From Macrostomum lignano (Eukaryota): a stretch of DNA of 64,000 bases. Below, piece after piece: positions 7,582 through 32,018 of the stretch. The stretch spans positions 419,029 to 483,028 of the forward strand of contig NIVC01000672.1 in the NCBI GenBank assembly GCA_002269645.1, read 5' to 3'. Below the pieces are notes generated by a model. It saw only the letters and a list, made by a program, of their open reading frames with translations. It ran no database searches and was not told the origin of the DNA. The first letter of the stretch is position 1. Each line of letters begins with the position of its first letter. The position numbers and the translations under genes are program-made.

Positions 7582-8361
7582 CTACTTTCTTTTCTTTTTC
7601 TTTTTCTTATTTTTCTTTTTCTGGTTCTGCTGCTGCTGTTGGCTCTGCTGTTGTTGCTGAACTGCTTTACCAGCTGCTCTCTGCTCAGCCGGAGCCAGGA
7701 AAAACTTTTTGTCCATTCGCACCAGCCAAGAGGACACCTGCCGCTTATCGGCTGAATTTTTGTGCGCCATTTCGTAATTGACTCGCTCGATCATGGACAC
7801 GACGTCTTCTTTCTTACCGAACTCCTTGAACACCGAGCATAGCGAAGTGATGAATCGAGACCCCTTTGACCCCTCTCTCGCACTCGTCTCTAGTGGCACA
7901 GTTGAGTGCGCCACAATGACGTCCTCGTATTCAGGCAGAGGTTCGCGCTCGCTTTGCTCGTCCGACACACCGTCGCTATAGTTGCGACACACCTGGAAAA
8001 TCAGCAGCTTCGGTTTATCGGTTCTTTTTCCGGCAAACTTTTGTAGAATATCTTTTTCTTGTACGTAAGCATCGTCGGATCCGGACTGGTGTCCTATTAT
8101 ACCGTGAGTCATCAGTACAAGAATAGCAACGTCTTCTTCTAAGACCAAATGACCTATTTTTTCACGAGTCAGATTGGTTCTGATTGAAACACAGAATCCC
8201 AATTCAGTGAACACTTTTAACAGTCTCTGAGTGTCCTTCTCGGAACCCAAGCGATTGCCATGTCTGCCGAATATGAGATTGTTGATGATGAGCACGCGGG
8301 TGCTGGGATCGGCAGTTGAATAGCTTTGTTCCTCACCTGTCTGCGTCAGCTTCCACAGTCT

Positions 8362-8430
<69 letters not shown>

Positions 8431-9056
8431 CACAGTCTCGCTGCTGTTTTCTCTCTCTTCTCTACGAGAGCATTCCGGCACGGGTATTTCAGGATCGACT
8501 TTGATTGCACAGTGAAATTTAGCCAAGCCGCATTTTTTGCAAACTTTCTTCGGTGACGATTCTTTAAGATTGTCTCCACAGCGGACGCAATCTTTGCAGT
8601 TGACGCAGATCAGTGGTATGTGACTTGCACTGTCTTTGCACGTGTCCTTGCAACTGCAGTCAGCGGCCGCCGAATCGACGGCTGCCGAATCGACAGCACA
8701 AGAGCACAGCGTGACTGGCTCAGATTTTTCAAAATTATCGAGGAGTGTTTTTACTCGTATCTTTCGCTTCTGATCCTCATTAGTTTCAATTTTAATCCAA
8801 ACGTCACCATGTCCGTCAATTTGTTGAAAGTCGTTATCTAGCTTGTCGCTAGCAACTACAACTGCATACTGCGAAGTGTCTGGTACTTGGATTTCTCCAT
8901 ACTCGTATTCAGCGTGCACTTCCCATCCATTCGCCTCCAGAGCAATTTTCTTCTGCTTCTTTTTCAGCGTTTCGTTCGTTGAATTCTCTGAATCCTTCTT
9001 GACAAGGATGAGAGCTGAATGACGTTTGGTTTCCGATGATGGTGGCTTTGATTGAT
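7582..9056 (-). CDS. Multi-caspase gene 1, terminal exon: degenerate module, Cys-rich linker, poly-Ala, then a catalytically intact caspase domain
   Basis: Acceptor tttcatttcAG (9058-9057); the frame stays open 9054 to 7582. Caspase motifs: RVLIINN...NRLGSEKD...LGFCV...LMTHG (His, plus-strand 8104-8106)...KPKLLIFQVCR (Cys, 7987-7989)...VIVAHST...GSRFITSLC...VN...QVSSW...KKFFL. Confidence 0.9.
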
Positions 9057-9445
9057 CTGAAATGAAATCAACGGCAAGGTTGAAAAGTTTTAAAAAGATT
9101 TTAATTTATGCTTACTAGTCTAGATATAGGAAATTTTATCTGTGTAGATAATAGATAGGCTAAATTTTATCTGTTTCAACATGTTAACCATTAGGTTTTT
9201 AATTAATCTTCAACCTCCGATCCTGGCTTATTGAATATTTCGACTATTTGCATAACTGCGCGCATTACTAGCTACTGCTCAATTCTATGTGCGTAGCAGC
9301 TGTGATTTTATGAGTTCGTAAATGATTTGATCTGTACTTATCTGAGCGCCATTATGTGTACCTTTTCCAAAGAAATGTTACGATATACAATACACTAACA
9401 TGTTCAGTTCATGTAAAAGTCTATCCAGAATGGAACATAATGTAG

Positions 9446-9585
9446 TCATGACAGTTCAACTGTAAATTTACCGTTATCCTCGTCAAGAAAGAATTTGTCA
9501 GTTGTCTGCACAATCCAGTACGGCAGAGGCACTTTAATATCTTTCTTGCTTTGTTCCTCAAAGTTCTGATAAGCCGTTGAAAAGC
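9446..9585 (-). CDS. Distal part of the gene 1 pseudo-caspase exon (its C-terminal p10 strand), detached by the LINE insertion
   Basis: Reads FSTAYQNFEEQSKKDIKVPLPYWIVQTTDKFFLDEDN(G). It continues ORF 15479..16741 (...KNGFSTA) across the 15-bp TSD. PYW..TTDKFFL matches the C-termini of the other three caspase domains. Phase-1 donor G|GTAAAT at 9472|9471. Confidence 0.88.
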
Positions 9586-10045
9586 ACGCGAAGGCGTATT
9601 CAGCATGCCAGTGAAGTATGAGACAGACTAGGCCCATGGGCTAAGGTCTGCGATGCTTCACGCCTGCCCCTATCTTCAGCAGGTCAAGGCTGGTGGGAGG
9701 TCTGCACCCTCTATTTGCCTCTGGCAGCCGCAGACCCCCCCCCCACGCTGTCTCGCAAGTCGACCCAGGGTACTCGTCCCCGCGTGTGTTCAAGGCAGTC
9801 CCTAGGGCTGCTGGACAGACTGGGCTCCGGCGCTGGCGACCCTATCCAGTGGCTTCGGCCGAATTTGGGTATGCGGGTCTGGCTCGCCAACCTGCAGGCC
9901 GTGGTACTGCTCAACGTACTCTCTAATGCCTAAGGTGTTGACCGTGCCGATGGGCTGGAAGGCCGGGGAGTAGTCCGGTCGCAAGCGGTCCCCCTCCTGG
10001 TGTCGGGCCAGCCTTGAGGGTGCTATTGGCCTACTGCCCGGTCAG

Positions 10046-11623
10046 GTGGAGCGGCCGGGTGGGTACCGCGCCCCTTTGAGGGTAGCCCACCAACCTTTTA
10101 TCATGGCCTTCGAGCCGACTATGGATAAACAAGCTATTTCTAGGGACGGGGACCCTTCTAAACCCCAACCTCAGTCCGAAGGACCGGCCGGCCCTGCTGG
10201 CAGATCCCAACCGACTGATTCAACTGTGGCAAAGGAAGGACCGGCTGGCTCTGCTGGCAGATCCGACCAGAGCTACCAAACTCAAAATACCCTAAGACCT
10301 GCCAGCTCCGCTGGTGGATCTAAGGGAACCGCGAGCTCTGAGCCTAAAGGACCGGCCAAATCTGGCAGATCCGATGAAGCTCAGCGGGCTCGGCTTGAGC
10401 GCAAACGCGCTAAACAACGCGCCAAAAGGCAGGCCAAGAAGGGAGCTGCGGGGGCCAAAGCGGCGGCGTCCACCATGGATGCTGAAGCGACTGGAGTCCC
10501 AAGGCAACCAGGCGGGCCGGCCGGTGGAAGCTCCAGTAGTTCAGCGGCGGCGCTCCCTGGAGCTGCTGCCGCGGCTGCTGAGGCCGAAACCACGGCGCAA
10601 CAAATGGCCACTGCCAACAAGGAGGTTCCTTCGGGAGCTACCTTTGCGGCGAAGGCCAAGGCCAAAATCCCGGGAGTGATCATCCAAGGTCGCGACCAGG
10701 ACTGGACCACTGATCAGCTTCAAAAAGTGTGGAGTGCTGTTGACTCCTATCTGATTGAGCTGACTGTCGAGGAGGGAATCTCCATCGGCGTTGAGCGGAT
10801 GGTGCTGCGAAGCACATTCGTTCTTATTGCTCCTAGCAGCGAGGAGGACGCTCGGCGGCTGCTCCAGCGGCTACCGACGGTCTCCTTGGATGCTGACCTT
10901 GGTGGAGCTCTTTTTCTTCGCGAGGGCCAGCGTCCAAAGACGATACCCTATGTGGTTTTCGTCCCTGCTAAGAGCACCGCAGCTGGACCAGACGTTATTC
11001 GCCGGGTCCTACTGCGTCTGAACCCCGACCTCCCTGCTAGTGGACTGGTGTATCACCGCAAAGTCCGCAGGGGGGAGACGGGCAACTCAATTGTCCTCGG
11101 CCTTTCCAGCACTTGGGCGAGTCGGTACCCTAATGGATCCTCTTTCCAGCTGGGTGCCCTCAAGCTCAAGTTGCGCCGAGGAAAGTCTGCCAAAGGGAAG
11201 GCTACTGCCAACCCCGGCATCTCCGGCAAGAGCGGGGCGCAGTCTAAGGCCCAAGGAAAGGCGCAAGCCGATCCCAAAGCCAAAGCTGCATCTCGCCCCT
11301 CTGCTAGCAGCAGTTCGGCGACCGCGGTAACGGCTCCGGCCGAGCCCCGGGAACCAAACCTGCCAGTCGGAGAAGGAGTTGAGGACGAGGCCGGGTCTTC
11401 GGAATCCGAGCTCTCCTCGGCCACCTTGGTGGGGTCTGAAGGTAAAGATGCAGGTGAGGAAGCTTCCTCCATCCTGTCATCGGAGCCTGAGGACTCTGCT
11501 GGGGGGCCGGTGGGGGTGAGGAGGCCATGGACGTCGACCAACTCCCATCTCCCAGTCAAGCCCCAGCGGCCTGGGACGAGGACGATCTGTTGTCCAAGTC
11601 TCCTTGATGGCCCTGGGCTCTAG
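10046..11623 (+). CDS. LINE ORF1 (probable nucleic-acid chaperone; no CCHC knuckle seen)
   Basis: 525-codon ORF upstream of ORF2, with low-complexity ends and a globular core (TFAAKAK...GALKLKLRR). Resemblance to the DUF4780-type ORF1 of LOA elements is my inference. Confidence 0.75.
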   Translation: MERPGGYRAPLRVAHQPFIMAFEPTMDKQAISRDGDPSKPQPQSEGPAGPAGRSQPTDSTVAKEGPAGSAGRSDQSYQTQNTLRPASSAGGSKGTASSEPKGPAKSGRSDEAQRARLERKRAKQRAKRQAKKGAAGAKAAASTMDAEATGVPRQPGGPAGGSSSSSAAALPGAAAAAAEAETTAQQMATANKEVPSGATFAAKAKAKIPGVIIQGRDQDWTTDQLQKVWSAVDSYLIELTVEEGISIGVERMVLRSTFVLIAPSSEEDARRLLQRLPTVSLDADLGGALFLREGQRPKTIPYVVFVPAKSTAAGPDVIRRVLLRLNPDLPASGLVYHRKVRRGETGNSIVLGLSSTWASRYPNGSSFQLGALKLKLRRGKSAKGKATANPGISGKSGAQSKAQGKAQADPKAKAASRPSASSSSATAVTAPAEPREPNLPVGEGVEDEAGSSESELSSATLVGSEGKDAGEEASSILSSEPEDSAGGPVGVRRPWTSTNSHLPVKPQRPGTRTICCPSLLDGPGL

Positions 11624-11646
11624 CCAGATATTGCATTTAATACAGT

Positions 11647-14600
11647 ATGACTAAGCTCCACGCTGCCAAAGGAGCGACATTCTGTCTGCAAATAAATTTA
11701 CAGCATTGCGTATCTGCGTCAGTAAATCTGATGAAGATTGCTGAGCTGTACAGGCCAGGCCTCATCCTGATCCAGGAACCCTGGATGCGCAACGGTAAGT
11801 TGCCCAACATTCCCTCTGGCTACTCTGATTTTTATGTGTGTGGCCCGGGGAACAGCCGCCCTAGAGCGGCTATCCTCGCTGCTAGCCATCTCCAGGCTTG
11901 GCTGAGGACTGATCTCTCTGATGGAGACCTTTGCGTCATCCAATCTAATCATTTCTCTCCGCGTACGTGTCTTGTTGCCTCGGTTTATATCCCAGGCGAC
12001 AGAGACCCTGCTCCGAGAGTTTACTGCGCCTTGCGCAGTACTGCGAGTCCCAGAACGCTGAGCTGTGCTTAGGGGGCGACCTCAACGCGCACCACAAGCA
12101 CTGGGGCAGCAAAGATACCAACACTAGAGGAGAGGAGCTTCTGGCCCTCATCTCTAACACAAACCTCATGCTCTGCAACCGCGGCAGCACTCCTACCTTT
12201 AATAATGGCAGATGGACCGAGGTCCTCGACGCCACACTCGTTACCCCAAGACTCTTTGACAGAGTCAAGGAGTGGAGAGTCTGGTCTGAGGAGCCCTCCC
12301 TGTCTGACCACTGCTTTATCGCCTTTAATATCGCGGACACTAAAACCCAGTCTCCGATCACTTGGAGACGCAATATCCGCAACACTGATTGGGCGGCCTA
12401 CAAGGCTGCCCTTGATCTGCACCTGCAGGAACTCACGGACTTACGTCCGATTGAGACCTGCGAGGATGTGGATCATATGGCTGAGACGCTGACAGGTTGC
12501 ATTATTGCAGCCTACGAAGCGGCTTGTCCTGCTCGCGCCTACAGAGGCAAGACCTCGGCGCCGTGGTGGAACCCGGAGCTGGGGAAACTCAGGCGGAAGG
12601 CCAAAAGCCTTCATCGCCGTGCCATGAAGACCGGAAACCCGGAGGACATGGAGCTTTTCCGGCAAGCCTCCCGCAATTTCAAATCTGAAGTGCGCAAGGC
12701 CAAGGAATGTAAGTGGCGCCAATTCTGCAATGAATTGGATCAAGACAGACCTACTTCTAGGCTTGTCAAGGCCCTTACAATGGACAAAATGTCCAAATTA
12801 GCCATGATAAAAAAGATGATGGCTCTCTTACTAAAGACCCTGAAGAAGTGCTTCAGCATATGCTTAGCACATTCTTCCCGAGGGTACCTACTGCTAGACC
12901 GGAGCCCAACCATTCGATGGATGGAGCCACCCTAGCGGCGGGCATTGTCACTGAAGACCTAATCGCTCGTGCGGTCAGAACCTTCAAACCCTTCAAATCT
13001 CCTGGACCTGATGGTATCTACCCTGTTCTCCTTCGTGAAGCAGCCAAGATACCCTCGTTCCTGAGACTCACCCGCAATCTTATGCGGGCCTCTATCCAGC
13101 TGGGATACGTTCCCAAAAGCTGGACTGAAGCTCGAGTAGTCTTTATTCCCAAACCTGGGAAGGGTGACTACCAAAGCGTCAAGGCCTTCCGGCCAATTAG
13201 CTTAACGTCAGCAATGCTTAAGCTCACTGAGAGGCTTATTCTCTGGCGGCTGCTCTCCTGCGAGCTGACAGCGATGCCCCTCAGCAATAATCAGCACGCC
13301 TTCCGTACCGGGAGGTCGACTGACAGCGCCCTGCATGCGATTGTCGAAAAGATTGAACGGGCGGTACTGGGTGACGGTTACGCCCTGGCTCTCTTTCTTG
13401 ACATTGTTGGCGCCTTCGACAACGTTATCTTTGAAGCGTTTCAGAGGGCCCTTCAAAATCGCAAAGCTCATGCTACCCTCATACGGTGGATCATGTACAT
13501 GATCTCCAACCGTACGGTCACTGCCCAACTTCTTGGGCAAACTGCCTCCACCAGAGTCTGTAAGGGTGGACCCCAAGGCGGAGTCCTCACCCCGACGCTC
13601 TGGAACCTGGTCATGGACGCTCTTCTGAGTGACTCCCGACCTGACCCCGTCTTCAAAGTCGGGTATGCTGATGACGTCACGGCCATTGTGGCAGGACCGT
13701 CTCCCAGCACGCTCAGGGATCTGATGCAGAGCTTTATCCGCAAAGCAGAATCCTGGGCCAATGACAATGGTTTGGAACTCTCTGAGCCCAAAACCGTTGC
13801 CATTATGTTTACCAGCAGACTACGCTGGAACATACGTCCTCTGCAGCTCTACGGCAGAGATATTGCCTTCGCGCACCAGACCAGATGTCTCGGGGTCACA
13901 CTTGACCACCGGCTCAACTGGTCCTTCCACGTGAAAGCAAAAGCTAAGCGTGCCTCAGCCATCCTGGCCCAGCTCCGACGAGCACTTGGCACTTCTTGGG
14001 GTCTATCCCCAAAGCGGCTTTGGTGGATCTATACTTCCGTAGTTAGACCTGCCATTACGTACGCCTCTGTTGTCTGGGTTAGCGCTACCCAGGTCAAAAG
14101 CCATGCAGACCTGCTCAACACGATCCAAGGCAGAGCGTGTAGGCTCATCTGCAACGCCACCAGGTCCACGCCCTTTGCTGGCATGGGGGCCTTTCTTAAT
14201 CTTCCGCCTCTTGACCTCTTCATCAGGGGTGAGGCGGCTAGAACGACGCGGCGTCTAATTGATGCCGGCGTCAAATTCATTTACATGAGAGCACCTGCTA
14301 AGCGGAACCTTGTCCCGCATAGCGATCTGTGCCTCAACTTTCTCAACGAGTGTCAGGCCAATCGCGTCTTCACCGATGGCATTGCCTCAACGCTCAACCT
14401 GAGACAGCGCTACTCCGTAGCTATCGACTCGCGCGATAACATCAATGACCATTGGAACCCTGGTGAGCTTCATTGCTACACCGACGGTTCTAAGCAGTCA
14501 GCCAACACCGGCTTTGGTGTTGGAATCTTTCTGAACGGGAGGGTCATCGCTACCCACGCTCAATACACTGGGGTCAACTCCAGTGTTTTCCAAAATGAAG

Positions 14601-15385
14601 TTCTGGCCATCAGCTCCTGCACTGCAGAGCTTCTCGCCACTGGCGTTACTGGTAAGAACATCATTTTCCATTCGGACAGCCAAGCTGCCTTGCACGCCAT
14701 CAGTGGCTGCAGCACCAACTCTGCTACAGTCCTTGACTGTATCAAACTCCTCAATGTGTTGGGTTCCGCCAACAAAATTACCCTTAAGTGGGTTCCGGGG
14801 CATGTGGGGATCCGAGGAAATGAGTTGGCTGACACCCTTGCAAAAGTTGGTGCCTCCGGCTCCTCTCTCGGCCCCGAACCTCTTGTCCCGATTCCTGGCT
14901 GTGTCATCGACTCGCGCATCAAAGCGTGGATCAGGACTCAGCACCGCTCGACTTGGGCGAACCGCACGAACTGCAGGCAATCCAGAGGCGCTGTCCCTCA
15001 GCCCTCTCACCAGCTCCGGAAGCTCCTCTTGCGCCTCTCGCGCAGAGACATCCGGGCTGCCACCATGACCCTCTCTGGTCACGGCTGCTTCTCCAGGCAC
15101 CAGTACCTGCAGGGCAACGCCACCAACGCCACCTGTAGTTTCTGCAACTCAGGTGACGAAACCGCTGAGCATTTCGTCAGCATCTGTCCCGCCTTCACGC
15201 GGGCCAGACTCACTTACCTCGGGCCACACACATCTATTACTGAAGCGTGCAAACCCGAAAACTTTAATCAGCTCATGCGCTACCTTCGGGCCACCCGCAG
15301 GGCTGAACTCTCCTTTCCAGAGAGCACCATAGCTGCTGGCGACACTGGGGGACCTCCCTGGGCGGCGCCAACCCTCCGTCCATAG
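11647..15385 (+). CDS. LINE ORF2: AP endonuclease, reverse transcriptase, RNase H and C-terminal CCHC, with two frameshifts (~12020, ~12810)
   Basis: APE: QINLQH, IQEPW, GGDLNAHH, LSDHC. RT: SPGPDGI, FRPISL, LDIVGAFD, PQGGVLTP, YADDV. RNase H: YTDGSK, NEVLAI, SDSQAAL, VPGHVGIRGNELAD. C-terminus: CSFC...ETAEHFVSIC. Confidence 0.95.
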
Positions 15386-15480
15386 CGACGCGTCGGCCGT
15401 TCAGGGACTAGCGGAATGGGCGCCCGCGCCTTCCCGCTGTGTCCCCTCCGGGACAGCCCTGCAGCTAAGTCAAGTAAGTC

Positions 15481-16638
15481 AAGCCGTTGAAAAGCCGTTC
15501 TTGACGATGCTGTTGATGGGGCAGATCATTGAAGCCACATCCGTTTTCCCGGCACCGAAGTAAATTGCTGAGCACAGAGCGAGCACGAAGCGGCTACCCA
15601 GGGGGGAACAACCATCAGCAGGGGTTGATTCAGATCTGACTATGATCAGACCGCTTTGTTTGTGAAAGTGCAAGGCATTAGTTGTACCTTCAGACCCTAA
15701 ATCAGTAACTTCTCCTGTAGTTCGATTATTTAATATGTTTCCAGCTTCACCAGAAGCATTGAAGCGTTTTCGCAGATGAACAACAACCAGCCTGTGCGCG
15801 TTAGAAAAACAACCTTCTTTGCTAATTTTAGTCAGCAGGTCGTTAACTGCTTTTTTTTCGGTCTCTTCCGCCAGGATTACTACCACATAGGAGGCACCGA
15901 ATTCCTCTGACGGCTTGATGTCATATTTATCAAAATATTTCACGGATTTAGTTTCGCACTGGTCAGGTGATTTGTATTTGGCGTGCTCAAGTGCATCTTG
16001 CAGATTTGCAACGTCCATCCTTGCACTTCTGCCCAAATCAGATGTGTCTTCGTGTAGCGTTTTGCTCACAAGAATGAGAGCGCGATTCTTGTGCTCTTCG
16101 TAATTATTGTAGATTTCTGGGATTTTTTCTTTCAGACGATTCCTCGAAAACTTAAACCCGGGTTCGCCGGTAATATAGTAGAATTGTTCCGTTTTAGAGC
16201 TGTTATTAAAATTTCCAACTGCGTCTTTCAGATTTTCGTTTTTATCTAACATGTCTTTGATCGCTTTCAGCTCACTTCCATCTGTGTCTTCTTTGCCTGC
16301 TTGACATAGGAAATTCACTTTTGTTAATTTTTGTTTATCCTTTTCGTCACGCAGCTTCTCTCTCAGCTTCTTGCTTCCACAAACAATCAGAAGTCTTTCC
16401 GACTGATCACTTCCGCAACTATCGAATGCCTCGAATAGATTCTTCAGTCCATCATTGAGTTTACTACTGCTAGAATGCACTACAAGAACTGCTTGCTTGA
16501 GTGCTTTGGTAGCTTCGACCACTTCCTTACATTTACCAATGTCACCAGTTTCCTCCAACTGAAAATTGCAGTCCCTCAGGTACTGTTTGAACTTCTCACA
16601 GTTTATCTGGTCGATATTAAATAAGAATGCCTTCCTGT
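15481..16638 (-). CDS. Multi-caspase gene 1, proximal part of the exon encoding a degenerate N-module and a catalytically dead pseudo-caspase (interrupted by the LINE)
   Basis: Acceptor tgcatttcAG (16640-16639), phase 1. Motifs RALILVS...MDVANLQDALEHAKY...YVVVILAEE (no His-Gly)...RLVVVHLRK (no Cys)...GSRFVLALC...DVASMICPIN. Confidence 0.85.
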
Positions 16639-18335: not shown

Positions 18336-18410
18336 CTTGGTCCTTTTGTGACGTGACTCCGCTATCTTTAGAATGCGAGCTCTGTGGAATCGATGGCGGA
18401 TCGGTCTCAT
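18336..18410 (-). CDS. 75-bp phase-1/1 microexon (ETDPPSIPQSSHSKDSGVTSQKDQ)
   Basis: ttattttattgcAG acceptor and G|GTGAGC donor. Paralogs at 20219-20293, 23033-23101 and 33314-33388. Confidence 0.6.
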
Positions 18411-18510
18411 CTGCAATAAAATAAGCATCTTCTGCAAGATCGCATGCATCATTTAGAACCATGCAGCATATTGTAGGCCGTGCGCTGCACTCTGCCCTTG
18501 CTCATTATTA

Positions 18511-20626: not shown

Positions 20627-20677
20627 CGGTGGCAGTTGAGTCGCCTTGGCTGAGATCCGTTAATATATCAGCATCAA
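20627..20677 (-). CDS. 51-bp phase-1/1 microexon (DADILTDLSQGDSTAT)
   Basis: gatttgcAG|tt gat gct...gcc acc g|GTGAGC. Confidence 0.6.
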
Positions 20678-20829
20678 CTGCAAATCAGATTGTTGAATTG
20701 GTTAGAATTGGATAGAGGCCAGGACTGGCTAATAGAGAGATGGGTTGAAGCGCACGGAGCCCCTCGGCATACTGTATGTCTCCATGCTGATGACAGCTGC
20801 TAATGAAGCCATCATCAAGCCCCTCGGCA

Positions 20830-21384
20830 TACTGTAATTGTTGTAAAAATTGTCGATTTCTGGGATTTTTTCTTTCAGACGATTCCTCGAAAACGTAAAC
20901 CCGGTTTCGCCGGGAATATAGTAGAATTTTACCGTTTTAGAGCTTTTATTAAAATCTCCAACTGCGTCTTTCAAATTTTCGTTTTTAATTAACATGTCTG
21001 CGATCTCTTTCAGCTCACTTCCATCTGTGTCTTCTTCGTCTTTTTTACATAGGAAATTCACTTTTGTTAATTTTTGTTGATTTTTTTCGTCACGCAGCTT
21101 CTCTCTAAGCTTCTTGCTTCCACAAACAATCAGAAGTCTTTCCGACTGATTATTTCCGTAACTATCGAATGCCTCGAGTAGAATATTTAGTTTATCATCG
21201 AGTTCACTACTGCTACGATGCACTACGAGAACTGCTTGCTTCAATGATTCCTCAGCTGACTTCTCAGCAAGCAGATTCGTAAATTCATCAATGTTATTAC
21301 ATTCTTTCAACTGAAAATCGCAGTCCTTCAGATACTTTTTGAAGCCTGTATTCGATGTGATATTAAAAAAGAATGCTTTCCTGT
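20830..21384 (-). pseudogene. Truncated third copy of the multi-caspase exon (N-module only)
   Basis: Close paralog of 16638-16090 (RKAFFFN...KQAVLVVH...ERLLIVCGSKKLREKLRDEK...FSRNRLKEKIPEI) with the same acceptor (21386-21385). It breaks off at ~20835 into the upstream repeat unit. Confidence 0.8.
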
Positions 21385-21505
21385 CTGAAATGCAGTTCAA
21401 AAATATTTGCGATAGCAAGTGAGGGCTGGGGCTAAATATCGGAGCAGTAACGCATCCGGTTCTGCACAAAACACCATCGCCCCAATCATGCAAGCACATT
21501 CTCAC

Positions 21506-21559
21506 CTGTGACTGCTGAAGTTGAGTCGCCTTGTTTGGGGTCCGTTAAACGAGATCCAA
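21506..21559 (-). CDS. 54-bp phase-1/1 microexon (GSRLTDPKQGDSTSAVT)
   Basis: aatttgcAG|tt gga tct...gtc aca g|GTGAGA, in frame with exon 21384. Confidence 0.6.
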
Positions 21560-22494
21560 CTGCAAATTGGATTGTTGAATTGGTTAGAATTGGATAGAAT
21601 TGGATGGAGGCCAGGACTGGCTAATAGAGAGATGGGTTGAAGCGTACGTAGCTCCTCAGTAGGGTCATCAGTGATACACTGTATTATGCCTCCATGCTGA
21701 TGAAAAGCCATCATCAAGCTATTCGTCTCCAAAGGCAGACTAGAGTTAGTAGTAATAACTTATCAGTTATTCAACATATTTCCATGGCTATGGCGGCGTA
21801 CCAAAAGTAATTTTTACAGAATAGCAACCGCACAAAATTGCTTCTAAATTTGTCCTACATTTATGACACAGGAACAGTGTTGTAATAGAATGCACTGCTG
21901 CTGACACACATTCACAAGAGTGGGCTATGGTTCTACCAGCTAATTACGTAATATAAGCTCTCTATCCTTCCCTGTGTTCCTGACAAGAGTTCAATACACG
22001 AAGAGCCAATTATCGTCAGCTAAGCTTAAAGCAGATTTTGCTAGACTTTTGCTCAACTTCTTGTGAGCTGAATATAACTTCCGGGGCTCCTGCGCCGGAA
22101 GGACCTTCTATGCTCTTTGATGCCGTTGAAAAAATGAATCTGCGTTGCTTGAATGAAAACAGTCAAACTGCCATAAGCTTTATTTTTCTCCGGAACAGAA
22201 CCCTCTCTCCTGCGCAAGCACTGCACTGCTCAAAAATATCTGTAGGAGAGACCCATGCAGCTCAGCCTTGCAGGTTATGGAAACGCGGGAGAGCGCCACC
22301 ACTGACTGCTGTTGGACCTCTTCACCCACTTCTCTCTACCAGGCCCCTGTTACTGGACACGCGCTCACGTCACTTAGCAGCACTTCTCAACTGACGAGGT
22401 TCAAATGTCTACTTCTGTTTTCAACTTCTCGAACACTTGAATTTTATTTATTGAGTACAAGGAGTAGATTAGGTTTAAGGCGTGCATGAGAGAA

Positions 22495-22541
<47 letters not shown>

Positions 22542-23032
22542 CAAAGCAATATATGGTACGCGATGGAGAAATGTACTTTTAATTATTTTGGCTCCGAGAA
22601 GCAAATGCAGTCTGCAGATGCCCAGATTGCTGGCATTGCCAGGAAAAAATGCCAAGTAATGCGGCTGTCAGCGCGCCTGGCCGTCAAGAAAGATACACAG
22701 CAGGCGCCCACACAAATAATACTGAGCTTTCCTAAAAACAGCTTTGTCGCCACATTCTTCCGAACCAAATCCGAGTGTCTTGTTTCATTCTAACTTGGCA
22801 ATGATAATGCGCAATGGTATTGCATCACAGTCACTGATGGCATATTACAAAACAGAAGACTCTATTTGAGGCTTTAGCTATTTAGTTAGAGTAGGTGAGG
22901 CTGCGTGTATAAAAAGCATTTAAAGAGCTTCAACTAAATCCAGAGTAAGGTCGACAGACTACCTATGATAATGAATAATACCTGACAACCGAGTTCAATG
23001 CTACTCGTAAACTCAAATTAATTCATACTTAC

Positions 23033-23101
23033 CCTGTTGCTCCTTTTGTGGAGAGCTATCTTTAGGAATCGAGCTCTGTGGATACGATTCCACATTTTCA
23101 C
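23033..23101 (-). CDS. 69-bp phase-1/1 microexon (ENVESYPQSSIPKDSSPQKEQQ)
   Basis: tattgcAG acceptor and G|GTAAGT donor. Diverged paralog of the 75-bp exon with a net 6-nt loss. Confidence 0.6.
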
Positions 23102-23496
23102 CTGCAATAAAATAAACATCTTCATGATTTCATGCATCATTTGAAACCAGAATTTGTTATTCGAAACAATCGATGCATGATTAAGGATTCAGTTCGTCTG
23201 TCATCGCCTCTTAGTTTACCTCCTCTATTCTATTTATGATTAACCTAGATGGTTATACTTTATTGATATGTTACATAGGTAAATAAAAAAAAACATAGCA
23301 TAGATATATTGTGCATCATATATTCTCCTATCCATAACTGTGGTGTTGAGTTTCATAAAATTCGGATTGAGCTGTTATACATGTATATTTCAATCGAGAC
23401 CAAATTACAATCGCCGGTAGACCAGCGCTAAATTAGCATAATTTATTTTCTTCTGCACAAAAAACCATCGCGCAAATCATGCGAGCACATTCTCAC

Positions 23497-23553
23497 CTGT
23501 GGCCACTGGAGCTGAGAAGATTTGGTTGCGGTTGCGATCCGCTAAAGCACCAA
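23497..23553 (-). CDS. 57-bp phase-1/1 microexon (GALADRNRNQIFSAPVAT)
   Basis: gattttcAG|tt ggt gct...gcc aca g|GTGAGA. Confidence 0.55.
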
Positions 23554-25047: not shown

Positions 25048-25049
<2 letters not shown>

Positions 25050-25080
<31 letters not shown>

Positions 25081-26757: not shown

Positions 26758-26828
26758 CGTCTGCCCTCGCCTGCAGTTATCTCCATCTATCTTGAATTTC
26801 TTTGCCGGCGACCAGAATTGTCTTGTCA

Positions 26829-27093
26829 TTATTGATTATGATTATGATTTTGATGATGGCGATGATGGTGATGGTGATAATGGTGATGGTGATTGTGATG
26901 ATGATGATGGCGATGGTGATGATGGTGTTGGTGATGGTGATGATGATGATGGCGATGATGGTGATGGTGATGGTGATGATGATGATGGTGATGGTGATGA
27001 TGTTGATGATGGTGATGGCGATGATGGTGATGGCGATGGCGATGATGATGATGTTGATGAAGGCGATGATAATAATGGTGATGATAGTGATGA
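26829..27093. repeat. Imperfect (GAT/GGT/GGC)n trinucleotide repeat
   Basis: Directly visible. Confidence 0.93.
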
Positions 27094-28744
27094 TATACTT
27101 TCTCAGAAATAAAAAGAACGCAATGAAGCAGCAGATTCTGTGGAATAAATAATGATTTAACAACAATCGGTTCTACACACGAACTTATGATAAAAAGTAT
27201 TATATAACAAAAAAACTGATTTATAGATTTTTATTATTGAAATTAGTTTTCTTTGATTATAGATAATCATAAATAGAAAGCAGAATAGCAAAGACTCAAA
27301 CCAGCACCCGTGCAGTAAAGTACATATTTGAAATGAGTAGCTACCAGCGTATTTTGAATCAAAAGACAAAATAAAGTAGCTCCGACACCTTATTAGGTTT
27401 CTTCACGATTCTTTAATAAAATTGAACTTTGAATCCCTTGAAAAAAATTGTCAGAATCAAAAAATTGGTGGGGATCACGCGGTGCTTAATTCCCTGCTAC
27501 CTGCTTAGAGACGATTCCTTGAGCACAGCACAGATGTTAACTCTGCCGAATAGAAACTGCTCAAGGAAGTGGCGTGCACGGGTGTTCCAGCCCAGGACTG
27601 AAGCACCAGGGGAGAATGGCATTAGTAAAAAAGTGTATTAATGGCAGAGGAAAATTATTAACTTCAATTTTCAGCCTATAAAATAGCTAAATGTAACCAA
27701 CAAGCAAAAACTACAATTGCAAAGTTATAAGAAGCAAAATCAGACACAAAAGGTGCTCAATGGGGGGTTTAAAGCCAAGAAAGTCTCACACAGACACGCG
27801 ACACATGCTAGCTAAATATAATGTAAGGTAATGCGATATAATATATAATAAATAACATAATAACAATAATAAATTATAACTGCAATATAATGCAGAACAG
27901 GTGACAATAATAAATAATTAATTTATGTAAGAGCCGCCATTATCTTAGAGAGAACTCATTTTTCAAATTTGAAAACATTGAACTATTTGATAGAAACACT
28001 GTTTCATAAAAATCTGCTTATAAATACCATTTTTACTGGAGAATCAATCAATTGCTCAGCCTTTAATAAACTTTGTACTCTTTCCCCGCCCTGTTAAAGT
28101 GTTAACGTTCATGCTTTACGTAGAAGAATGAGTTGATAAGATTTATTTAAAATGATATTTGGCAATGACGTCTGCTAGTCAACTGATTTTTGTTTGTGTG
28201 CAATTGCGTGATAGTATGGCAATGCGAAAATGAAACCTGCACAACTATACTCATGTTTAATATACATATGCTGGGGCTAATTGATTGGGGAACCAACTGA
28301 AATGATAAACTATGTTTTCTATGTTTTTAATTATCTGATATAAAGATTCCAATCGATTTTTATTTCATTTTCACAGAGTATACTTAGTGATAGCAATAAC
28401 TGATGAATTAGCAATCGAAAAAGCAAGTCTTGTAAGCTGAGCATTTGATTTGATCTCCAGAGTAAGATTAAGCATTGAATGAGAGCGTAAACAAATCATG
28501 CAAATATTTTTGAGTCAAGATTACGCCACGCTCGCTCACACCACTATCAAATTGCGGCACTGGAAAAATCTGAAAAGCCGCGTGATTAACATTATTAAGC
28601 TTGGCCTGGTTTTAAGATATGGTGTGAATGAGCATCAACACTATAAGCAAAGGGTAAAGGACATGCTTTGTCAGTCAGTTGTAGCTATTATTAGTTTTAT
28701 TTGCTTTTAAATTGTTCTGGCCTTGCCTCAGGCTCCTCAGTCCA

Positions 28745-30129
28745 TCAGGCAACTGAATTGTCTTCATTGTCGGCATTGTTGTCCGCATTGTTGTCCGCAT
28801 TGTTGTCCGCATTGTTGTCCGCATTGTTGTCCGCATTGTTGTCCGCATTGTTGTCCGCATTAACCAACCAGAACTTCTCTGTTGTTGTGGCTGTCCAACA
28901 CGGCAGCTGCCACTGGTGGCTATCTGTAGCAAGATGACTAGGCTCATCAGGATAATTAGGCTTTTCATAATAGTGCATCATGCGATAGTTGACGAATTTG
29001 CTGATCTCAATAACATCCAGTTGATTATTCGGCATGTCACGAACATAATCAGCAAAGGCCTGGCAGAGGGTGAGAACAAACCTGCTACCACAACCGTCCT
29101 TTCGACTACTATAGTCTCCAGGAGCGGTGGAGTAAGCAACTATCGTGTTAGCCGGTATTTTACAGACGACATTTCCTTCAGCACCGTGGTGTCTGCAGGA
29201 TTGAATGACTACAAGCTTCTGCTCTTTAATGTTGTTTAGGGATTCAAACAGATCGTTTTCCTCAACGCTTTTGTCATCAACTCCCGTAATTTTTCCGAGC
29301 TCTCCGTGTGACATAAAAACGATAACAGAGGTTTTGCTGTGATCTTCAAGTTTGGAAAACTCCTCAACCACTGTTCGCAAAGCTTCGGAGCTCAAATTGT
29401 GCCAGATGGAAATTCGGTAGTAAAACTGCTGGAAAAGATGACGCAGAACTGCAGTATCGTACAGACTGGCCAGTCTGTCATCCTCACATTTAGGGAATAT
29501 AGCGTTGCTGACTATCAGGAGGCGTGGGCGCTTCCCCTCTGGTTTTGAAATAGTGCTTTTCCCTTCAAAGGATTCTTTTACTTCTTCGTCGTGTCCAACA
29601 TTCGAAAAAACCAAAGCTTCATCTGTATTAAATGTTTCTTCGCGTCGTCGCGGAAGCGGTATCACAGGGAATTCTTCTCCACCCTGGAGTTGTTCTGCTT
29701 GCTGTCTGATTTTAACTTTATCCAGCCACTTCTGAATACATTCAGCGATTACTTTTGCACTGTTACGAACGCTAGCGTGAAACATTTTGTCACTGATTTT
29801 CGTTACTTGCTGTTCATTCTGCGATCCGATTTCGCATGAAAAAACAACAATTTTCTTAGCATTGCTTGCTTCTTCTTCAAGTTTATTCTTGAATTGCTGC
29901 AGGTCGCGATACGTAGTGTAGACAAGGAGAGCCAGAACGAACTTCGCATTACATGTGACTGCACTGGGGGTGCAGAATAGCTCAAACTTTTCTGTTATCT
30001 CAACTTCCTCTGCCCTTACCTGGTAGCCGCTGGCAGCGAGAAGTTTTTCGAAATCTTGAGCTTTCTTTAAAATTTCCCCATGGTTTTGTTGGATGCCGCT
30101 GTCCAACAGTATCAGCGCCTGGTGGGAAC
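28745..30129 (-). CDS. Multi-caspase gene 2, terminal exon: degenerate module plus a catalytically intact caspase domain with an (ADNN)n tail
   Basis: Acceptor tctttttAG (30131-30130), phase 1, in frame with ORF 28745..30106. Motifs RLLIVSN...DRLASLYD...VFMSHG...KLVVIQSCR...IVAYST...GSRFVLTLC...VN...QLPCW..TTEKFWL. A 12-bp repeat lies at 28769-28860. Confidence 0.9.
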
Positions 30130-30206
30130 CTAAAAAGACAATTTGACACGTAAATTATTGTGCAAGAAATTTATAACTTCGCCATGAAAACAAAATTTTA
30201 TTTTAC

Positions 30207-30236
30207 CTGGTTGAAAATCGTTTGGTCTAGGCTTAT
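30207..30236 (-). CDS. 30-bp phase-1/1 linker microexon of multi-caspase gene 2 (D-KPRPNDFQP-G)
   Basis: aaatttcAG|at aag cct aga cca aac gat ttt caa cca g|GTAAAA. Introns 30563-30237 and 30206-30130 are both GT-AG and keep the frame. Confidence 0.75.
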
Positions 30237-30563
30237 CTGAAATTTAGAAGTTTCATAAAGTGACTCGGGGAATTCACATGTATTTTTTAACTTATTGAAA
30301 TTTTTTAAACTCGAATTTCAAATTGTCAAGCTCAACCATCGCGTTCCAGAAAACAATACCCAATAGGAGACCCCATCATCCAGTATTGTTTCAAGCACTC
30401 AAGAGTTATTATCTGAACTGTATGAACTGTACAAGCAGTCGAAAGGAATTTCATCATATGAGCGTAACGCTACGCTTGCAGGATACGAGAATACGCTCGT
30501 ATTCTCATTTTTACAGAAGCGTTTGGTAACTTCTGAAAGCCTAATTGGAACAATTCTACCAAC

Positions 30564-32018
30564 CTTTTTTTTCTTGCGAAGAATTTCCTTTTCCATTCGA
30601 CTTTTCGTGCGACGGCTGCTCCGCGTCTGTCTTGCACAAGAAGAAGTTTCTGTGCGTTAGCCACGTCCATCGTGGCTTCTCATCGAAACCATCCATTGAG
30701 GGGCGGCGAAATGATTTGTTGACTTCATTGATTAGTGAAACCACGTCCTTACTATCGGCATGCTTGTAATATGCAGTACAGATGCTTTTGACCAGTTCGC
30801 TGCCAGTTTTATCGCAAAGAGGCTCAGTATACCTGCACGTGACCAGGCCAGCTTGGCTGTGATGTGATTCATCTGTATTCATGGATATTCTAAGATACTG
30901 CGCCAGCTCCCGGCAATTATATGGGATATTCGTCCGTCTAGCGTCGGCCTTTTCATTTGTGCCTCCAGTGGATTTTTGCTCACCATCTTTTATTCGTAAG
31001 TTGAATATCACGAGCTTTGGAGCTGACCGATTGCCAATGTTTTTTAAAGCACCGATAATTTCGGTTTCAGTTACTGTTGAGCCGTCCGAGCACTCAATTT
31101 TACCGTCTTTTTCAAAAGCAGTGATGACGAGAATCCACAGGTTGTGATGCTCCTTAAACTCTTCAGCCGTACGAATCAGCTCGCTCGCCTTCAGGTTGTT
31201 AAATTGCACTACACCAAACAGCATGTTCTCAAACAAGTAGCACAGTCGGTCACTGTCTATCTTTGAACCTTCGAGTGCGTCAGCGCCACTGGTGGTCACG
31301 CAATTGACAACAAGAGCAGTTGGTTCGCCATGGCGCTCATAGTAACCCATTTTATCTTCGTTTATTGTTGCGTCTGGCTTCATCTGCTGCAAATCCTGAG
31401 TTCTGAGCAGTTCTGAGTCCTTTTCAAGATCATCTCTACTTTTCTCATCAAATCGGCAAGGCTGTCGAAAGCGCACGAATTCGGGTGTGCCGTATTTGAG
31501 ATCAACAATCCCTTTTTCCTTGATGGAAGTTTTGAATGATTCTTTACGAATAATTGACCCGATGCAATTCGTCTGCCAATGCAGAGTTTGATGTTCCTGC
31601 AAGGACTTGAAAAAATCTTCGATCCGATCAGCCGCTGCAACTTTATACAAGCAGAAAATGTTTTTGTAACTTTCTTGGTAGAAGCTCTCAGAAAAGTCAA
31701 CCGAAGGATCGAACGACCGGTTGCTGTCAACCTTGCAGTAGACGAGCAGGCAGCGCTGCGTTTTGGAGTCTTTAATGGCTTCGAGAGTATTCTGTAAGCT
31801 CAGCGAATTGCCGATTTCCTCATCATTCACGACAACAACAACTGAAAATCTTGTGCCCGAAAGACGCTCGATCAGCTGGTTTAGCTGGAGCTGACTGGAA
31901 TCCGGATTCGAGGAAAAGCCGCAGCTTTTAATGAATTCAAAATATTCATTTCCGGCTTTTGCTTCACGAGATTCCGAAGACAAGTTGCTGCTGAATACCG
32001 CAACGCAGCGTTGTTCAA
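30564..32018 (-). CDS. Multi-caspase gene 2, exon encoding a degenerate N-module and a catalytically dead pseudo-caspase
   Basis: Acceptor ttttgcatttcAG (32020-32019). Motifs PTALVVN...EGSKIDSDRLCYLFE...WILVITAFE (no His-Gly)...PKLVIFNLR (no Cys)...GSELVKSIC...DVVSLINEVN...PRW..LTHRNFFL. Donor AG|GTTGGT at 30564|30563. Confidence 0.87.

What the first reader, a model, noticed from the sequence alone, without database searches (positions are those of the whole stretch)
7582..32018. Single-chain pseudo-caspase/active-caspase fusion proteins, encoded twice in the cluster
Seen in sequence: the four caspase ORFs are not four genes. Gene 2 exons 32018-30564, 30236-30207 and 30129-28745 join through GT-AG phase-1 introns into one frame (957 codons counting one upstream base). 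Gene 1 exons 16638-15481 + 9570-9472 (LINE removed) and 9056-7582 join the same way (911 codons). In both, the upstream domain lacks the dyad (ILAEE/VHLRK and ITAFE/FNLRI where SHG/QACR belong; Leu replaces Cys in both). The downstream domain keeps it (MTHG+QVCR; MSHG+QSCR). Established: caspases are activated by dimerisation, and dead paralogs such as cFLIP-L tune caspase-8 by heterodimerising. Inference: these may be covalently pre-assembled pseudo-heterodimers (self-activating or auto-inhibited), an architecture I do not recognise among described animal caspases. Conservation in two very diverged paralogs argues for function.
Basis: partly seen in the sequence, partly recalled or inferred. 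Interest (0 to 1): 0.92.

Follow-up and report, generated by a model that had tools for sequence, protein, structure and literature searches.

The report
Flatworm caspases with a built-in dead caspase domain
Two neighbouring genes of the flatworm Macrostomum lignano each encode one long protein with an inactive caspase-like domain followed by an intact caspase, a real but not unprecedented layout: mammalian caspase-16 has it, and related flatworm proteins are already in public databases.

Summary
On the minus strand, the four caspase-like ORFs join through GT-AG phase-1 introns into two open frames. Gene 1 needs a 5.9-kb LINE removed first.

The window is Macrostomum lignano DNA. It is syntenic with Mlig_3_7 contig NIVC01001342.1.

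In both genes the upstream domain is a true caspase homolog without the catalytic His/Cys. A profile built only from the dead domains hits CED-3 at 5e-19. The downstream domain keeps R179, H237, Q283, C285 and R341 and models as caspase-3/7-like.

At least three more M. lignano paralogs have RNA-seq-derived models with the same dead-then-live order in one ORF: PAA73902, PAA86652 and PAA75222.

- Gene 1 is split by a recent LINE with a perfect 15-bp target-site duplication, so it is probably a null allele here.
- The only annotated transcript of gene 2's closest copy crosses both proposed junctions. It then uses an internal donor and skips the whole live domain, giving a dead-only isoform.
- Each half also carries an unidentified ~200-aa alpha/beta domain.
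- The architecture is published: mammalian caspase-16 in 2025, with the same pseudo-heterodimer idea, and two-CASc caspases in a mussel.

The intramolecular-dimer mechanism remains untested.

The parts
34058..34076 (-). Gene 2 exon 1 (ATG, encodes MAAPQT, phase-1 donor)
   Evidence: Matches the start of P0001. ATG and G|GTGAGC donor read directly.
33724..33774 (-). Gene 2 exon 2 (phase 1-1 mini-exon)
   Evidence: tblastn of P0001 aa 7-25, with cag|...|gtgagc boundaries.
33314..33388 (-). Gene 2 exon 3 (phase 1-1 mini-exon)
   Evidence: tblastn of P0001 aa 24-50, with cag|...|gtgagc boundaries.
30564..32018 (-). Gene 2 exon 4: X1 alpha/beta domain (32016-31372) plus the dead caspase-like domain (31338-30631). 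ITAFE lies at the SHG position and FNLRI at the QACRG position.
   Evidence: Open frame and splice sites. Pfam PF00656 at 3.7e-7. Custom caspase HMM at 8.6e-25. Missing R179, H237 and C285. Coordinates.
30207..30236 (-). Gene 2 30-nt microexon (phase 1-1)
   Evidence: tttcag|...CAG|gtaaaa boundaries. The homologous microexon is used in model P0001.
28745..30129 (-). Gene 2 exon 6: X2 domain (30127-29543), live caspase domain (29542-28862; MSHG, QSCR), (ADNN)n tail and stop codon.
   Evidence: Pfam PF00656 at 1.7e-28. All five catalytic and S1 residues present. Foldseek to caspase-7/-3 at about 5e-14. AATAAA at 28701-28696, 43 nt after the stop.
30019..30020 (-). Internal alternative donor CAG|GTAAGG (phase 0) inside exon 6
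   Evidence: Used by the RNA-seq-derived model P0001 at the homologous L001 site. The sequence is identical in the window.
27505..27597 (-). Alternative 3' exon (SWAGTPVHATS...NRL, then stop). It gives a 610-aa dead-only isoform.
   Evidence: tblastn of P0001 aa 581-611 at 97% identity. Acceptor cttcag| and stop codon read directly. ATTAAA 87 nt downstream.
15481..16638 (-). Gene 1 large exon, part 1: X1 domain (16636-16067) and most of the dead caspase-like domain (from 16051; ILAEE, VHLRK).
   Evidence: Open frame. hhalign against an active-caspase profile at 95.2% probability, E 2.8e-8. Coordinates.
9586..15480 (+). Non-LTR retrotransposon (LINE) inserted antisense into the gene 1 coding exon. 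Target-site duplications at 9571-9585 and 15481-15495.
   Evidence: Pfam Exo_endo_phos_2, RVT_1 and RNase_H. Perfect 15-bp TSD. Absent from the L001 paralog.
9472..9570 (-). Gene 1 large exon, part 2: the end of the dead domain, including the beta6 motif PYWIVQTTDKFFL. Ends in a phase-1 donor.
   Evidence: Frame continuity once the LINE and one TSD copy are removed. ACG|gtaaat donor.
7582..9056 (-). Gene 1 last exon: X2 domain with a Cys-rich CxxC cluster and a poly-Ala run, live caspase domain (8316-7693; MTHG, QVCR), Q/K-rich tail and stop codon.
   Evidence: Pfam PF00656 at 3.1e-32. Catalytic and S1 residues present. No Met between the junction and the caspase domain.
20729..21505 (-). Truncated third copy of the gene 1-type X1 exon (a gene fragment)
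   Evidence: ORF translation parallels gene 1 aa 1-190 and then diverges. blastn shows a duplicated block 22538-20856 matching 17835-16107. dN/dS against gene 1 is 1.34.
18337..18411 (-). Exon-3-like 5' mini-exon upstream of gene 1. Further copies lie at 20220-20294 and 20628-20678. The start exon of gene 1 is unresolved.
   Evidence: tblastn with the P0001 and P0003 N-termini, and splice sites read directly.

Best explanation
These are two members of a Macrostomum-specific caspase gene family. Gene 2 is intact. Gene 1 was recently broken by a LINE.

Each protein has the layout: short N-terminal peptide, X1 (unidentified alpha/beta domain), catalytically dead caspase-like domain, linker, X2, catalytically competent effector-type caspase domain.

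Shown here:
- One ORF runs across both halves.
- The upstream domain is a caspase homolog that has lost Arg179, His237 and Cys285.
- The downstream domain keeps all catalytic and S1 residues.
- The same layout occurs in at least five paralogs.
- A dead-only splice isoform exists for the gene 2 lineage.

Inferred:
- The family arose by duplication or fusion of a phase 1-1 exon encoding [X + caspase]. The first copy then decayed catalytically but kept its C-terminal beta6 strand motif, which forms the dimer interface in canonical caspases.
- The dead domain therefore most likely acts as a built-in partner or regulator of the live domain, giving a one-active-site pseudo-heterodimer. This is what has been proposed for mammalian caspase-16 and resembles FLIP(L)/caspase-8.
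- The dead-only isoform of gene 2 would be a possible FLIP-like regulator acting in trans.
- The X domains, which evolve at dN/dS of about 1 or more, are candidate recruitment or sensor modules.
For: - Splice and frame check.
- M. lignano identity and synteny with L001.
- P0001 uses both gene 2 junctions. Mlig_3_7 models are built from RNA-seq with StringTie, TACO and TBONE, which cuts transcripts at trans-splice and poly(A) evidence (PMC5730564).
- P0004, P0005 and P0007 carry dead plus live domains in one model, with a big exon / intron / big exon structure.
- P0002 and P0003 span the gene 1-type junction.
- Caspase homology of the dead domains.
- The secondary-structure order of the AF2 model is the same for both domains.
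- Live-domain residues and Foldseek to caspase-7/-3 at 5e-14.
- No AUG lies between the junction and the live caspase domain in gene 1 or P0005.
- The beta6 motif PxWxxQTTxxFFL is kept in dead and live domains.
- dN/dS of the dead domains is 0.52 and 0.61.
- AATAAA sits 43 nt after the long-form stop. No poly(A) signal was seen within about 350 nt after the upstream ORF's in-frame stop; the only AATAAA there lies in the intron after the microexon.
Against: - No transcript evidence was available for the window's own genes.
- The only annotated transcript of the nearest gene 2 copy skips the live domain, so the long isoform of gene 2 rests on ORF integrity and on paralogs.
- Gene 1 is LINE-disrupted, and its start exon was not found.
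- Selection is weak. Overall dN/dS is 0.46-0.89, the X domains are at about 1 or more, and substitution counts are small.
- Inter-domain packing could not be assessed (AF2 pTM 0.32, mean pLDDT 45).
- A ~200-aa X2 domain separates the two caspase domains in most members, so intramolecular pairing is not self-evident.
Confidence: 0.6

Rival explanations
1. The single chain is real, but the dead domain is only a degenerate prodomain. It could be a scaffold, a decoy substrate site, an autoinhibitor or an adaptor-binding module, and it does not pair with the live domain through the canonical beta6 interface. Activation would still need intermolecular homodimerisation of live domains, or recruitment through the X domains.
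For: - X2 (~200 aa) separates the two caspase folds in gene 1, gene 2, P0004 and P0007.
- Sequence identity between the dead and live domains of one protein is low, at about 24-27%.
- The caspase-16 authors list intermolecular homodimerisation as an open alternative.
Against: - The most conserved part of the dead domain is its C-terminal alpha4-alpha5-beta6 region, including the interface strand.
- P0005 links the two folds by only about 25 residues.
Confidence: 0.25
2. In vivo the two halves of gene 2 are mostly separate products. The major mRNA would encode only X1 plus the dead caspase (a FLIP-like stand-alone pseudo-caspase). The live domain would be produced rarely, from another transcript (trans-spliced or internally initiated), or not at all.
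For: - The only model at the nearest copy (P0001, 611 aa) uses the strong internal donor CAG|GTAAGG and a 3' exon beyond the live domain. Both are intact in the window.
- TACO was run with --isoform-frac 0.75. I take this to mean that minor isoforms were probably dropped.
- M. lignano trans-splices many genes.
Against: - The X2 domain straddles that donor, so the short form truncates it.
- The downstream ORF has no AUG before residue 610 of the spliced frame.
- The live domain keeps every catalytic residue in both copies.
- An AATAAA follows the long-form stop.
- Paralog models P0004, P0005 and P0007 read through.
- No separate protein covering the live half was found in the database.
Confidence: 0.12
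3. The locus is a decaying product of tandem duplications, and the window's copies are not functional genes.
For: - A LINE sits in the gene 1 coding exon.
- A truncated third copy lies at 21505-20729.
- 5' mini-exons are scrambled and duplicated.
- dN/dS is 0.89 overall for gene 1 against its L001 paralog, and about 1 or more for the X domains.
Against: - About 900-1000 codons stay open in both genes and in paralogs that share only about 20-25% identity.
- The perfect TSD implies the LINE is very recent.
- Dead and live domains show dN/dS of 0.5-0.6.
- Paralogs are expressed, because the models are RNA-seq-derived.
Confidence: 0.03

Closest known systems
Mammalian caspase-16 (CASP16). Eckhart et al., J Mol Evol 2025, PMC12198278; review PMC12292325.
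   Same: One polypeptide carries an N-terminal caspase-fold domain that lacks the catalytic His and Cys, followed by a C-terminal catalytically intact caspase domain. It arose by duplication of caspase-coding exons. The same hypothesis has been proposed for it: an intramolecular dimer with a single active site, by analogy with FLIP(L)/caspase-8.
   Different: - It is not orthologous. The flatworm dead domains score best against M. lignano caspases, while caspase-16 belongs to the vertebrate caspase-14-like group.
- The flatworm proteins carry an extra ~200-aa alpha/beta domain before each caspase fold. In most members this includes one between the two folds.
- They form a multigene family.
- One member has a dead-only splice isoform.
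cFLIP(L) (CFLAR) paired with caspase-8
   Same: A catalytically dead caspase paralog acts as a heterodimer partner that tunes a live caspase. The 610-aa dead-only isoform of gene 2 would be the closest analogue.
   Different: FLIP is a separate polypeptide with tandem DEDs and is recruited at the DISC. No DED, CARD or other death-fold domain was detected here (Pfam). Flatworms reportedly lack FADD (PMC11463336).
Invertebrate caspases predicted with two or three CASc/Peptidase_C14 domains. Mytilus coruscus has four such genes (PMC10967218). Others: Penaeus vannamei XP_027235325, Branchiostoma XP_066297229, Drosophila gunungcola XP_052839520.
   Same: Tandem caspase domains sit in one predicted chain. 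The shrimp protein also mixes live and dead domains (live-dead-dead). Its complete ORF lies on many 2.6-4.7 kb Logan contigs, which I read as transcripts.
   Different: - Most of the others keep the dyad in both domains.
- The domain order differs.
- None shows the X1/X2 domains.
- Several may be gene-prediction fusions. For example, Gryllus bimaculatus has a fused model where G. longicercus has separate genes.
M. lignano proteins PAA73902 (Mlig007987.g1), PAA86652 (Mlig018970.g1), PAA75222 (Mlig020397.g1), BOX15_Mlig027753g1, and UniProt A0A1I8G5.. / A0A1I8HG..
   Same: They belong to the same family and have the same dead-then-live order and exon plan. P0001 is 93% identical to the first half of gene 2. 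P0002 is the L001 counterpart of gene 1.
   Different: They are deposited only as 'hypothetical / Caspase family p20 domain-containing protein'. I found no paper describing the tandem layout. P0005 lacks X2.

Membership tests
Caspases (MEROPS C14A / Pfam PF00656): downstream domains | Significant match to the Peptidase_C14 model above the curated cut-off | tested here: met
   Gene 1 scores 112.6 bits and gene 2 scores 100.3 bits, against a cut-off of 21.4.
Caspases (MEROPS C14A / Pfam PF00656): downstream domains | Catalytic His237/Cys285 dyad (SHG, QxCR) and the Asp-binding S1 residues Arg179, Gln283 and Arg341 | tested here: met
   All five residues are present in both genes by alignment to a caspase HMM.
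Caspases (MEROPS C14A / Pfam PF00656): downstream domains | Caspase alpha/beta fold | tested here: met
   AF2 region 690-860 has pLDDT 63-87. Foldseek finds caspase-7/-3 at E about 5e-14 with target-normalised TM of about 0.7.
Caspases (MEROPS C14A / Pfam PF00656): downstream domains | Asp-directed proteolytic activity; activation by cleavage of the intersubunit linker | not testable with these tools
   The gene 2 linker (HHGAEGNVVCKIP) is short and has no Asp. Gene 1 has several Asp residues there. An enzyme assay is needed.
Pseudo-caspase (catalytically dead C14 domain): upstream domains | Demonstrable homology to the caspase domain over its full length | tested here: met
   - Gene 2: Pfam 30.5 bits, above the 21.4 cut-off; custom HMM at 8.6e-25.
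- Gene 1: Pfam is silent, but hhalign gives 95.2% probability, E 2.8e-8 over 214 columns.
- A dead-domain-only profile hits CED-3 at 5e-19 and caspase-3 at about 1e-9 to 6e-11, over both the p20 and p10 parts.
Pseudo-caspase (catalytically dead C14 domain): upstream domains | Loss of the catalytic residues | tested here: met
   There is no His at the SHG position and no Cys at the QACRG position in gene 1, gene 2, P0004, P0005 or P0007. Arg179 is also lost.
Pseudo-caspase (catalytically dead C14 domain): upstream domains | Folds as a caspase domain | tested here: inconclusive
   The AF2 secondary-structure order of residues 233-454 mirrors the live domain, but pLDDT is only 55-72 and falls below 50 in the loops. 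No separate model or fold search of this domain could be run.
Caspase-16-type architecture (dead CASc prodomain plus live CASc in one chain) | Both domains are translated as one polypeptide | tested here: inconclusive
   - The frames are continuous.
- RNA-seq-derived models of paralogs contain both domains.
- The gene 1 type has no internal AUG.
- Against this, the only model of the nearest gene 2 copy omits the live domain, and no reads were available for this window.
Caspase-16-type architecture (dead CASc prodomain plus live CASc in one chain) | Orthology with vertebrate CASP16 (the caspase-14-like clade) | tested here: not met
   The nearest relatives of both the dead and the live domains are M. 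lignano caspases. There is no special affinity to vertebrate sequences in the phmmer score matrix or in the representative search. I read this as convergent origin. No formal phylogeny was built.
Caspase-16-type architecture (dead CASc prodomain plus live CASc in one chain) | Intramolecular beta6-beta6 pairing of the two caspase folds | not testable with these tools
   The full-length AF2 model has pTM 0.32, and no coordinates or PAE are returned. The beta6 motif is conserved in both domains, which is only indirect evidence.
FLIP-like pseudo-caspases (CFLAR) | Tandem death-effector domains N-terminal to the dead caspase domain | tested here: not met
   Pfam finds no DED, CARD or other death-fold in any of the ORFs. 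X1 is predicted as an alpha/beta domain.

The most novel reading that the evidence does not exclude
Macrostomum evolved, independently of mammals, a whole family of self-contained, single-active-site caspase pseudo-heterodimers. The built-in dead domain would replace partner-driven dimerisation. A splice switch in gene 2 would release a FLIP-like dead-only regulator. The fast-evolving, unclassifiable X domains (dN/dS of about 1 or more) would be lineage-specific sensor or recruitment modules. Together this would be a compact sensor-regulator-executioner system, possibly compensating for the reported loss of the FADD/DED-caspase extrinsic pathway in flatworms.
Probability: 0.15. Interest if true: 0.65.

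Novelty: new member of a known kind. Interest (0 to 1): 0.4.

Why it matters
The 2025 caspase-16 papers state that no other caspase with a caspase-like prodomain was known, and no experiment on caspase-16 exists. It is absent from mouse and is a pseudogene in humans.

A second, independently evolved family with the same dead-then-live layout would show that the arrangement is a recurrent solution, not a mammalian oddity. M. lignano has RNAi and transgenesis available, so the family would be experimentally tractable. It would allow a direct test of whether a tethered dead caspase domain activates or restrains its neighbour.

The finding also adds an unreported class to the flatworm apoptosis inventory. 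The 2024 lophotrochozoan survey noted only a kinase-prodomain caspase in M. lignano.

It is not a new principle. The idea and the architecture are published, and related proteins are already deposited.

Tried and rejected
- **Word-index protein searches.** The three searches returned only P0001, P0002 and P0003. The third, run with alignment A1, found nothing new. The exhaustive representative search was what revealed the family.
- **Identity of X1.** Pfam gave only sub-threshold Rossmann-like hits (Glycos_transf_1, E 0.002-0.007). AF2 on a 7-sequence alignment gave pLDDT 51. Foldseek against PDB gave nothing below E 0.23, with chance hits to cofilin and MIF. I had considered a TIR-like fold from the beta-alpha pattern, but nothing supports it.
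- **X1/X2 homology.** This would show duplication of the whole module. hhalign gave only 20% probability, E 1e-3, although the alignment is colinear. It is left open.
- **Literature searches for the Mlig gene IDs** returned nothing. No supplements are held for the lophotrochozoan caspase survey.
- **The first literature query** was swamped by 'tandem caspase recruitment domain' matches.
- **Prokaryotic reading rejected.** The ORF listing uses bacterial start codons. The GTG and TTG 'starts' of the four ORFs are artefacts of exon boundaries.
- **Homologous internal donor in gene 1.** It is weak (GAA|GTGCAC), so the dead-only isoform is probably specific to the gene 2 lineage.

Full report
**What the sequence shows**

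- Gene 2 exons 32018-30564, 30236-30207 and 30129-28745 have canonical ...tttcag| acceptors and |gt donors. All introns are phase 1, and the exons read as one frame with no internal stop.
- Gene 1 exons 16638-15481 + 9570-9472 and 9056-7582 behave the same way.
- The codon counts (957 and 911, counting one upstream base) and all eight quoted motifs are correct.
- The segment removed from gene 1 is a genuine non-LTR retrotransposon on the + strand at 9586-15480. It has an ORF1, a split APE endonuclease, RT and RNase H.
- It is flanked by a perfect 15-bp target-site duplication at 9571-9585 and 15481-15495.
- Removing the element and one duplication copy restores the frame exactly. The paralogous exon in a related contig is uninterrupted at that point.

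**Organism and context**

The spliced gene 2 protein is 93% identical to NCBI 'hypothetical protein BOX15_Mlig027753g1' of the flatworm Macrostomum lignano (P0001).
- The contig carrying P0001 is GCA_002269645.1 NIVC01001342.1, fetched as L001. It is colinear with the window in reverse orientation at 94-99% nucleotide identity.
- Synonymous divergence of gene 2 between the two copies is about 0.03-0.05. This fits the ~95%-identical duplicated blocks described for this genome (PMC5730564).
- From P0001 I located gene 2's three 5' mini-exons in the window: 34076-34058 with the ATG, 33774-33724 and 33388-33314. All are phase 1-1.
- The full long product is 1004 aa.

**Are the halves one gene?**

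The Mlig_3_7 gene models are derived from RNA-seq. They were built with StringTie, TACO and the TBONE pipeline, which cuts transcripts at experimentally observed trans-splice and poly(A) sites (PMC5730564).
- P0001 uses the homologues of both gene 2 junctions: large exon to microexon, and microexon to second large exon.
- An exhaustive HMMER search of 1.84 billion representatives found three more M. lignano proteins: PAA73902 (838 aa), PAA86652 (691 aa) and PAA75222 (1017 aa). Each has two Peptidase_C14 hits.
- Their genomic loci show the same plan. One large exon encodes X1 plus caspase domain 1. A short intron follows, about 73-300 nt in two of them and about 2.5 kb with room for a microexon in the third. 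A second large exon encodes caspase domain 2.
- UniProt models P0002 and P0003 read through the gene 1-type junction...FFLDEDN|.... P0002 is the L001 counterpart of gene 1.
- In gene 1 and in PAA86652 there is no Met between the junction and the live caspase domain, so the downstream half cannot be translated on its own from an AUG.
- An AATAAA lies 43 nt after gene 2's long-form stop. None was seen within about 350 nt after the upstream ORF's in-frame stop; the only AATAAA there lies in the intron after the microexon.

Single-chain proteins are therefore well supported for the family.

**An important qualification for gene 2**

P0001 does not continue into the live domain.
- After ...ASGYQ it uses a strong internal donor, CAG|GTAAGG (window 30020|30019). 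It splices to a small exon beyond the gene (window 27597-27505) and ends after 31 more residues.
- Donor, acceptor, ORF and a downstream ATTAAA are all intact in the window. They predict a 610-aa protein made of X1, the dead caspase domain and a stub of X2.
- No database protein covers the live half of gene 2.
- The long isoform of gene 2 therefore rests on four things: the intact 460-codon continuation in both copies, the complete catalytic residue set, the poly(A) signal, and analogy with the paralogs.
- The homologous position in gene 1 is a poor donor.

**The upstream domains are dead caspase domains**

- Pfam detects Peptidase_C14 in gene 2's upstream ORF above the curated cut-off (30.5 against 21.4 bits). 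It does not detect it in gene 1's.
- A caspase HMM built from the search hits scores gene 2's upstream domain at 8.6e-25. For gene 1 it scores only the C-terminal part, at 1.2e-5.
- A profile-profile comparison of the gene 1-type domain with 94 full-length caspase domains taken from the search hits gives 95.2% probability, E 2.8e-8, over 214 columns spanning the whole fold. LAEE falls on SHG and VHLRK on QACRG.
- A profile made only of dead domains (alignment A4) hits solved structures of CED-3 at 5e-19, over both the p20 and p10 parts, and caspase-3 at about 1e-9 to 6e-11.
- In all five paralogs the upstream domain lacks Arg179, His237 and Cys285, while the downstream domain keeps Arg179, His237, Gln283, Cys285 and Arg341.
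- The full-length AlphaFold2 model is poor overall (mean pLDDT 45, pTM 0.32). It gives the same order of strands and helices for both caspase regions, with the live domain at pLDDT 63-87.
- Foldseek on that model returns caspase-7/-3 at about 5e-14.

- Each caspase fold is preceded by an alpha/beta region of about 150-230 aa (X1, X2) that is conserved among paralogs. PAA86652 lacks X2.
- I could not classify X1. Pfam is sub-threshold, the AF2 model has pLDDT 51, and Foldseek finds nothing below E 0.23.
- Homology between X1 and X2 is suggestive only: colinear, but 20% probability.
- The C-terminal beta6 strand motif PxWxxQTTxxFFL corresponds to QIPCIVSMLTKELYF of caspase-3, which I quote from memory. 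It is retained in both dead and live domains of all members. In canonical caspases this strand forms the dimer interface, which is established knowledge.
- The gene 2 live domain has a short intersubunit linker with no Asp. This argues, by inference, against activation by linker cleavage.

**Selection**

- Between the window and L001 copies of gene 2, dN/dS is 0.52 for the dead domain, 0.61 for the live domain and about 1.05 for X1 and X2. These rest on few substitutions.
- Between gene 1 and its L001 paralog, dN/dS is 0.61 for the dead domain and 1.39 for X1.
- The caspase folds, dead ones included, are under modest constraint. The X domains are either relaxed or diversifying.
- By phmmer score, the dead domains are closest to M. 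lignano caspases. That suggests a lineage-specific origin. No formal tree was built.

**How it probably works**

- Shown: the architecture and the residue states.
- Inferred: a phase 1-1 exon encoding [X + caspase] was duplicated or fused. The first copy lost catalysis but kept its interface strand.
- Caspases need dimerisation, and a dead partner can activate or restrain a live one (FLIP(L)/caspase-8). The most economical reading is therefore a tethered pseudo-heterodimer with one active site, with gene 2's dead-only isoform as a possible regulator acting in trans.
- Rivals: a non-pairing regulatory prodomain; mostly separate products for gene 2; decay. In this haplotype gene 1 is very likely non-functional.

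**Comparison with what is known**

- The same layout and the same hypothesis were published for mammalian caspase-16 (PMC12198278 and PMC12292325). The review states that no other caspase with a CASc-like prodomain was known.
- Four Mytilus coruscus caspases with two CASc domains have been reported (PMC10967218).
- My search also turned up tandem C14 predictions in shrimp, amphioxus, ostracod, mites, beetles and Drosophila gunungcola. The shrimp protein is live-dead-dead, and its complete ORF lies on many 2.6-4.7 kb contigs. Some of the other predictions may be annotation fusions.
- The 2024 lophotrochozoan caspase survey mentions only a kinase-prodomain caspase for M. lignano (PMC11463336).
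- This is therefore a new, apparently convergent member of a known kind, with its own features: the X domains, the multigene family and the dead-only isoform. The underlying proteins are already deposited but undescribed.

**Verdict**

- The novelty claim is overstated.
- The mechanism is plausible but untested.
- Interest is moderate.

Noticed in passing
window 35313-45970 (+): An LTR retrotransposon of about 10.6 kb. The long terminal repeats match at 100% over the stretches compared (35313-36249 against 44725-45661). It has a Gag zinc knuckle and an integrase. It is absent from the syntenic contig L001, so it is a very recent insertion just upstream of gene 2.
   Followed up: partly
window 9586-15480 (+): The LINE in gene 1 is near full length, but its endonuclease and RT ORFs are split into overlapping frames. 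Its 3' end carries a short (TAAGTC)-like repeat, not a poly(A) tail.
   Followed up: partly
window 20147-23540 (-): The 5' region is scrambled and duplicated. There are a truncated X1 exon copy (21505-20729), two extra copies of the exon-2/3-like mini-exons (20678-20628, 20294-20220), and P0003-like 5' exon matches at about 23533-23492 and 23078-23034. The true first exon of gene 1 was not identified.
   Followed up: partly
window 8317-9054 (-), gene 1 X2 region: A Cys-rich cluster with repeated CxxC spacing (ICVNCKDCVRCGD...KVCKKCGLAKFHC) is conserved in P0002 and P0003 and absent from gene 2. It could be a small zinc-binding insert. It is followed by a 22-residue poly-Ala run in the window copy only.
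   Followed up: no
window 5888-7279: A minisatellite is open in three frames on the minus strand, with repeating PLSIIPLSxTQHHSPQxHSASFPSV units. This is probably non-coding tandem repeat, not a gene.
   Followed up: no
window 48300-49550: A long tetrapeptide-like (QTDR)n / 12-nt tandem repeat coincides with an AT-skew spike of 0.575 (48001-50000 bin) in the composition profile. The same repeat is present in L001.
   Followed up: no
window 50560-55434 (-) = L001 1-4141: This is the 3' part of a DNA polymerase theta-like gene (DEAD/Helicase_C/POLQ_helical/DNA_pol_A in the annotated L001 product). It is the upstream neighbour of the caspase cluster.
   Followed up: no
window 28745-28880 (-) and 26777-27166: Gene 2 ends in an (ADNN)n repeat whose copy number and sequence differ between the window and L001. 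An A/T-rich trinucleotide microsatellite lies between gene 2's stop and the alternative 3' exon.
   Followed up: no
L002 318-1274 and L003 10908+: Single-domain caspase genes sit immediately next to the tandem-domain paralogs PAA75222 and PAA73902. PAA75221 (318 aa) is next to PAA75222. This suggests that the caspase clusters arose by local duplication.
   Followed up: no
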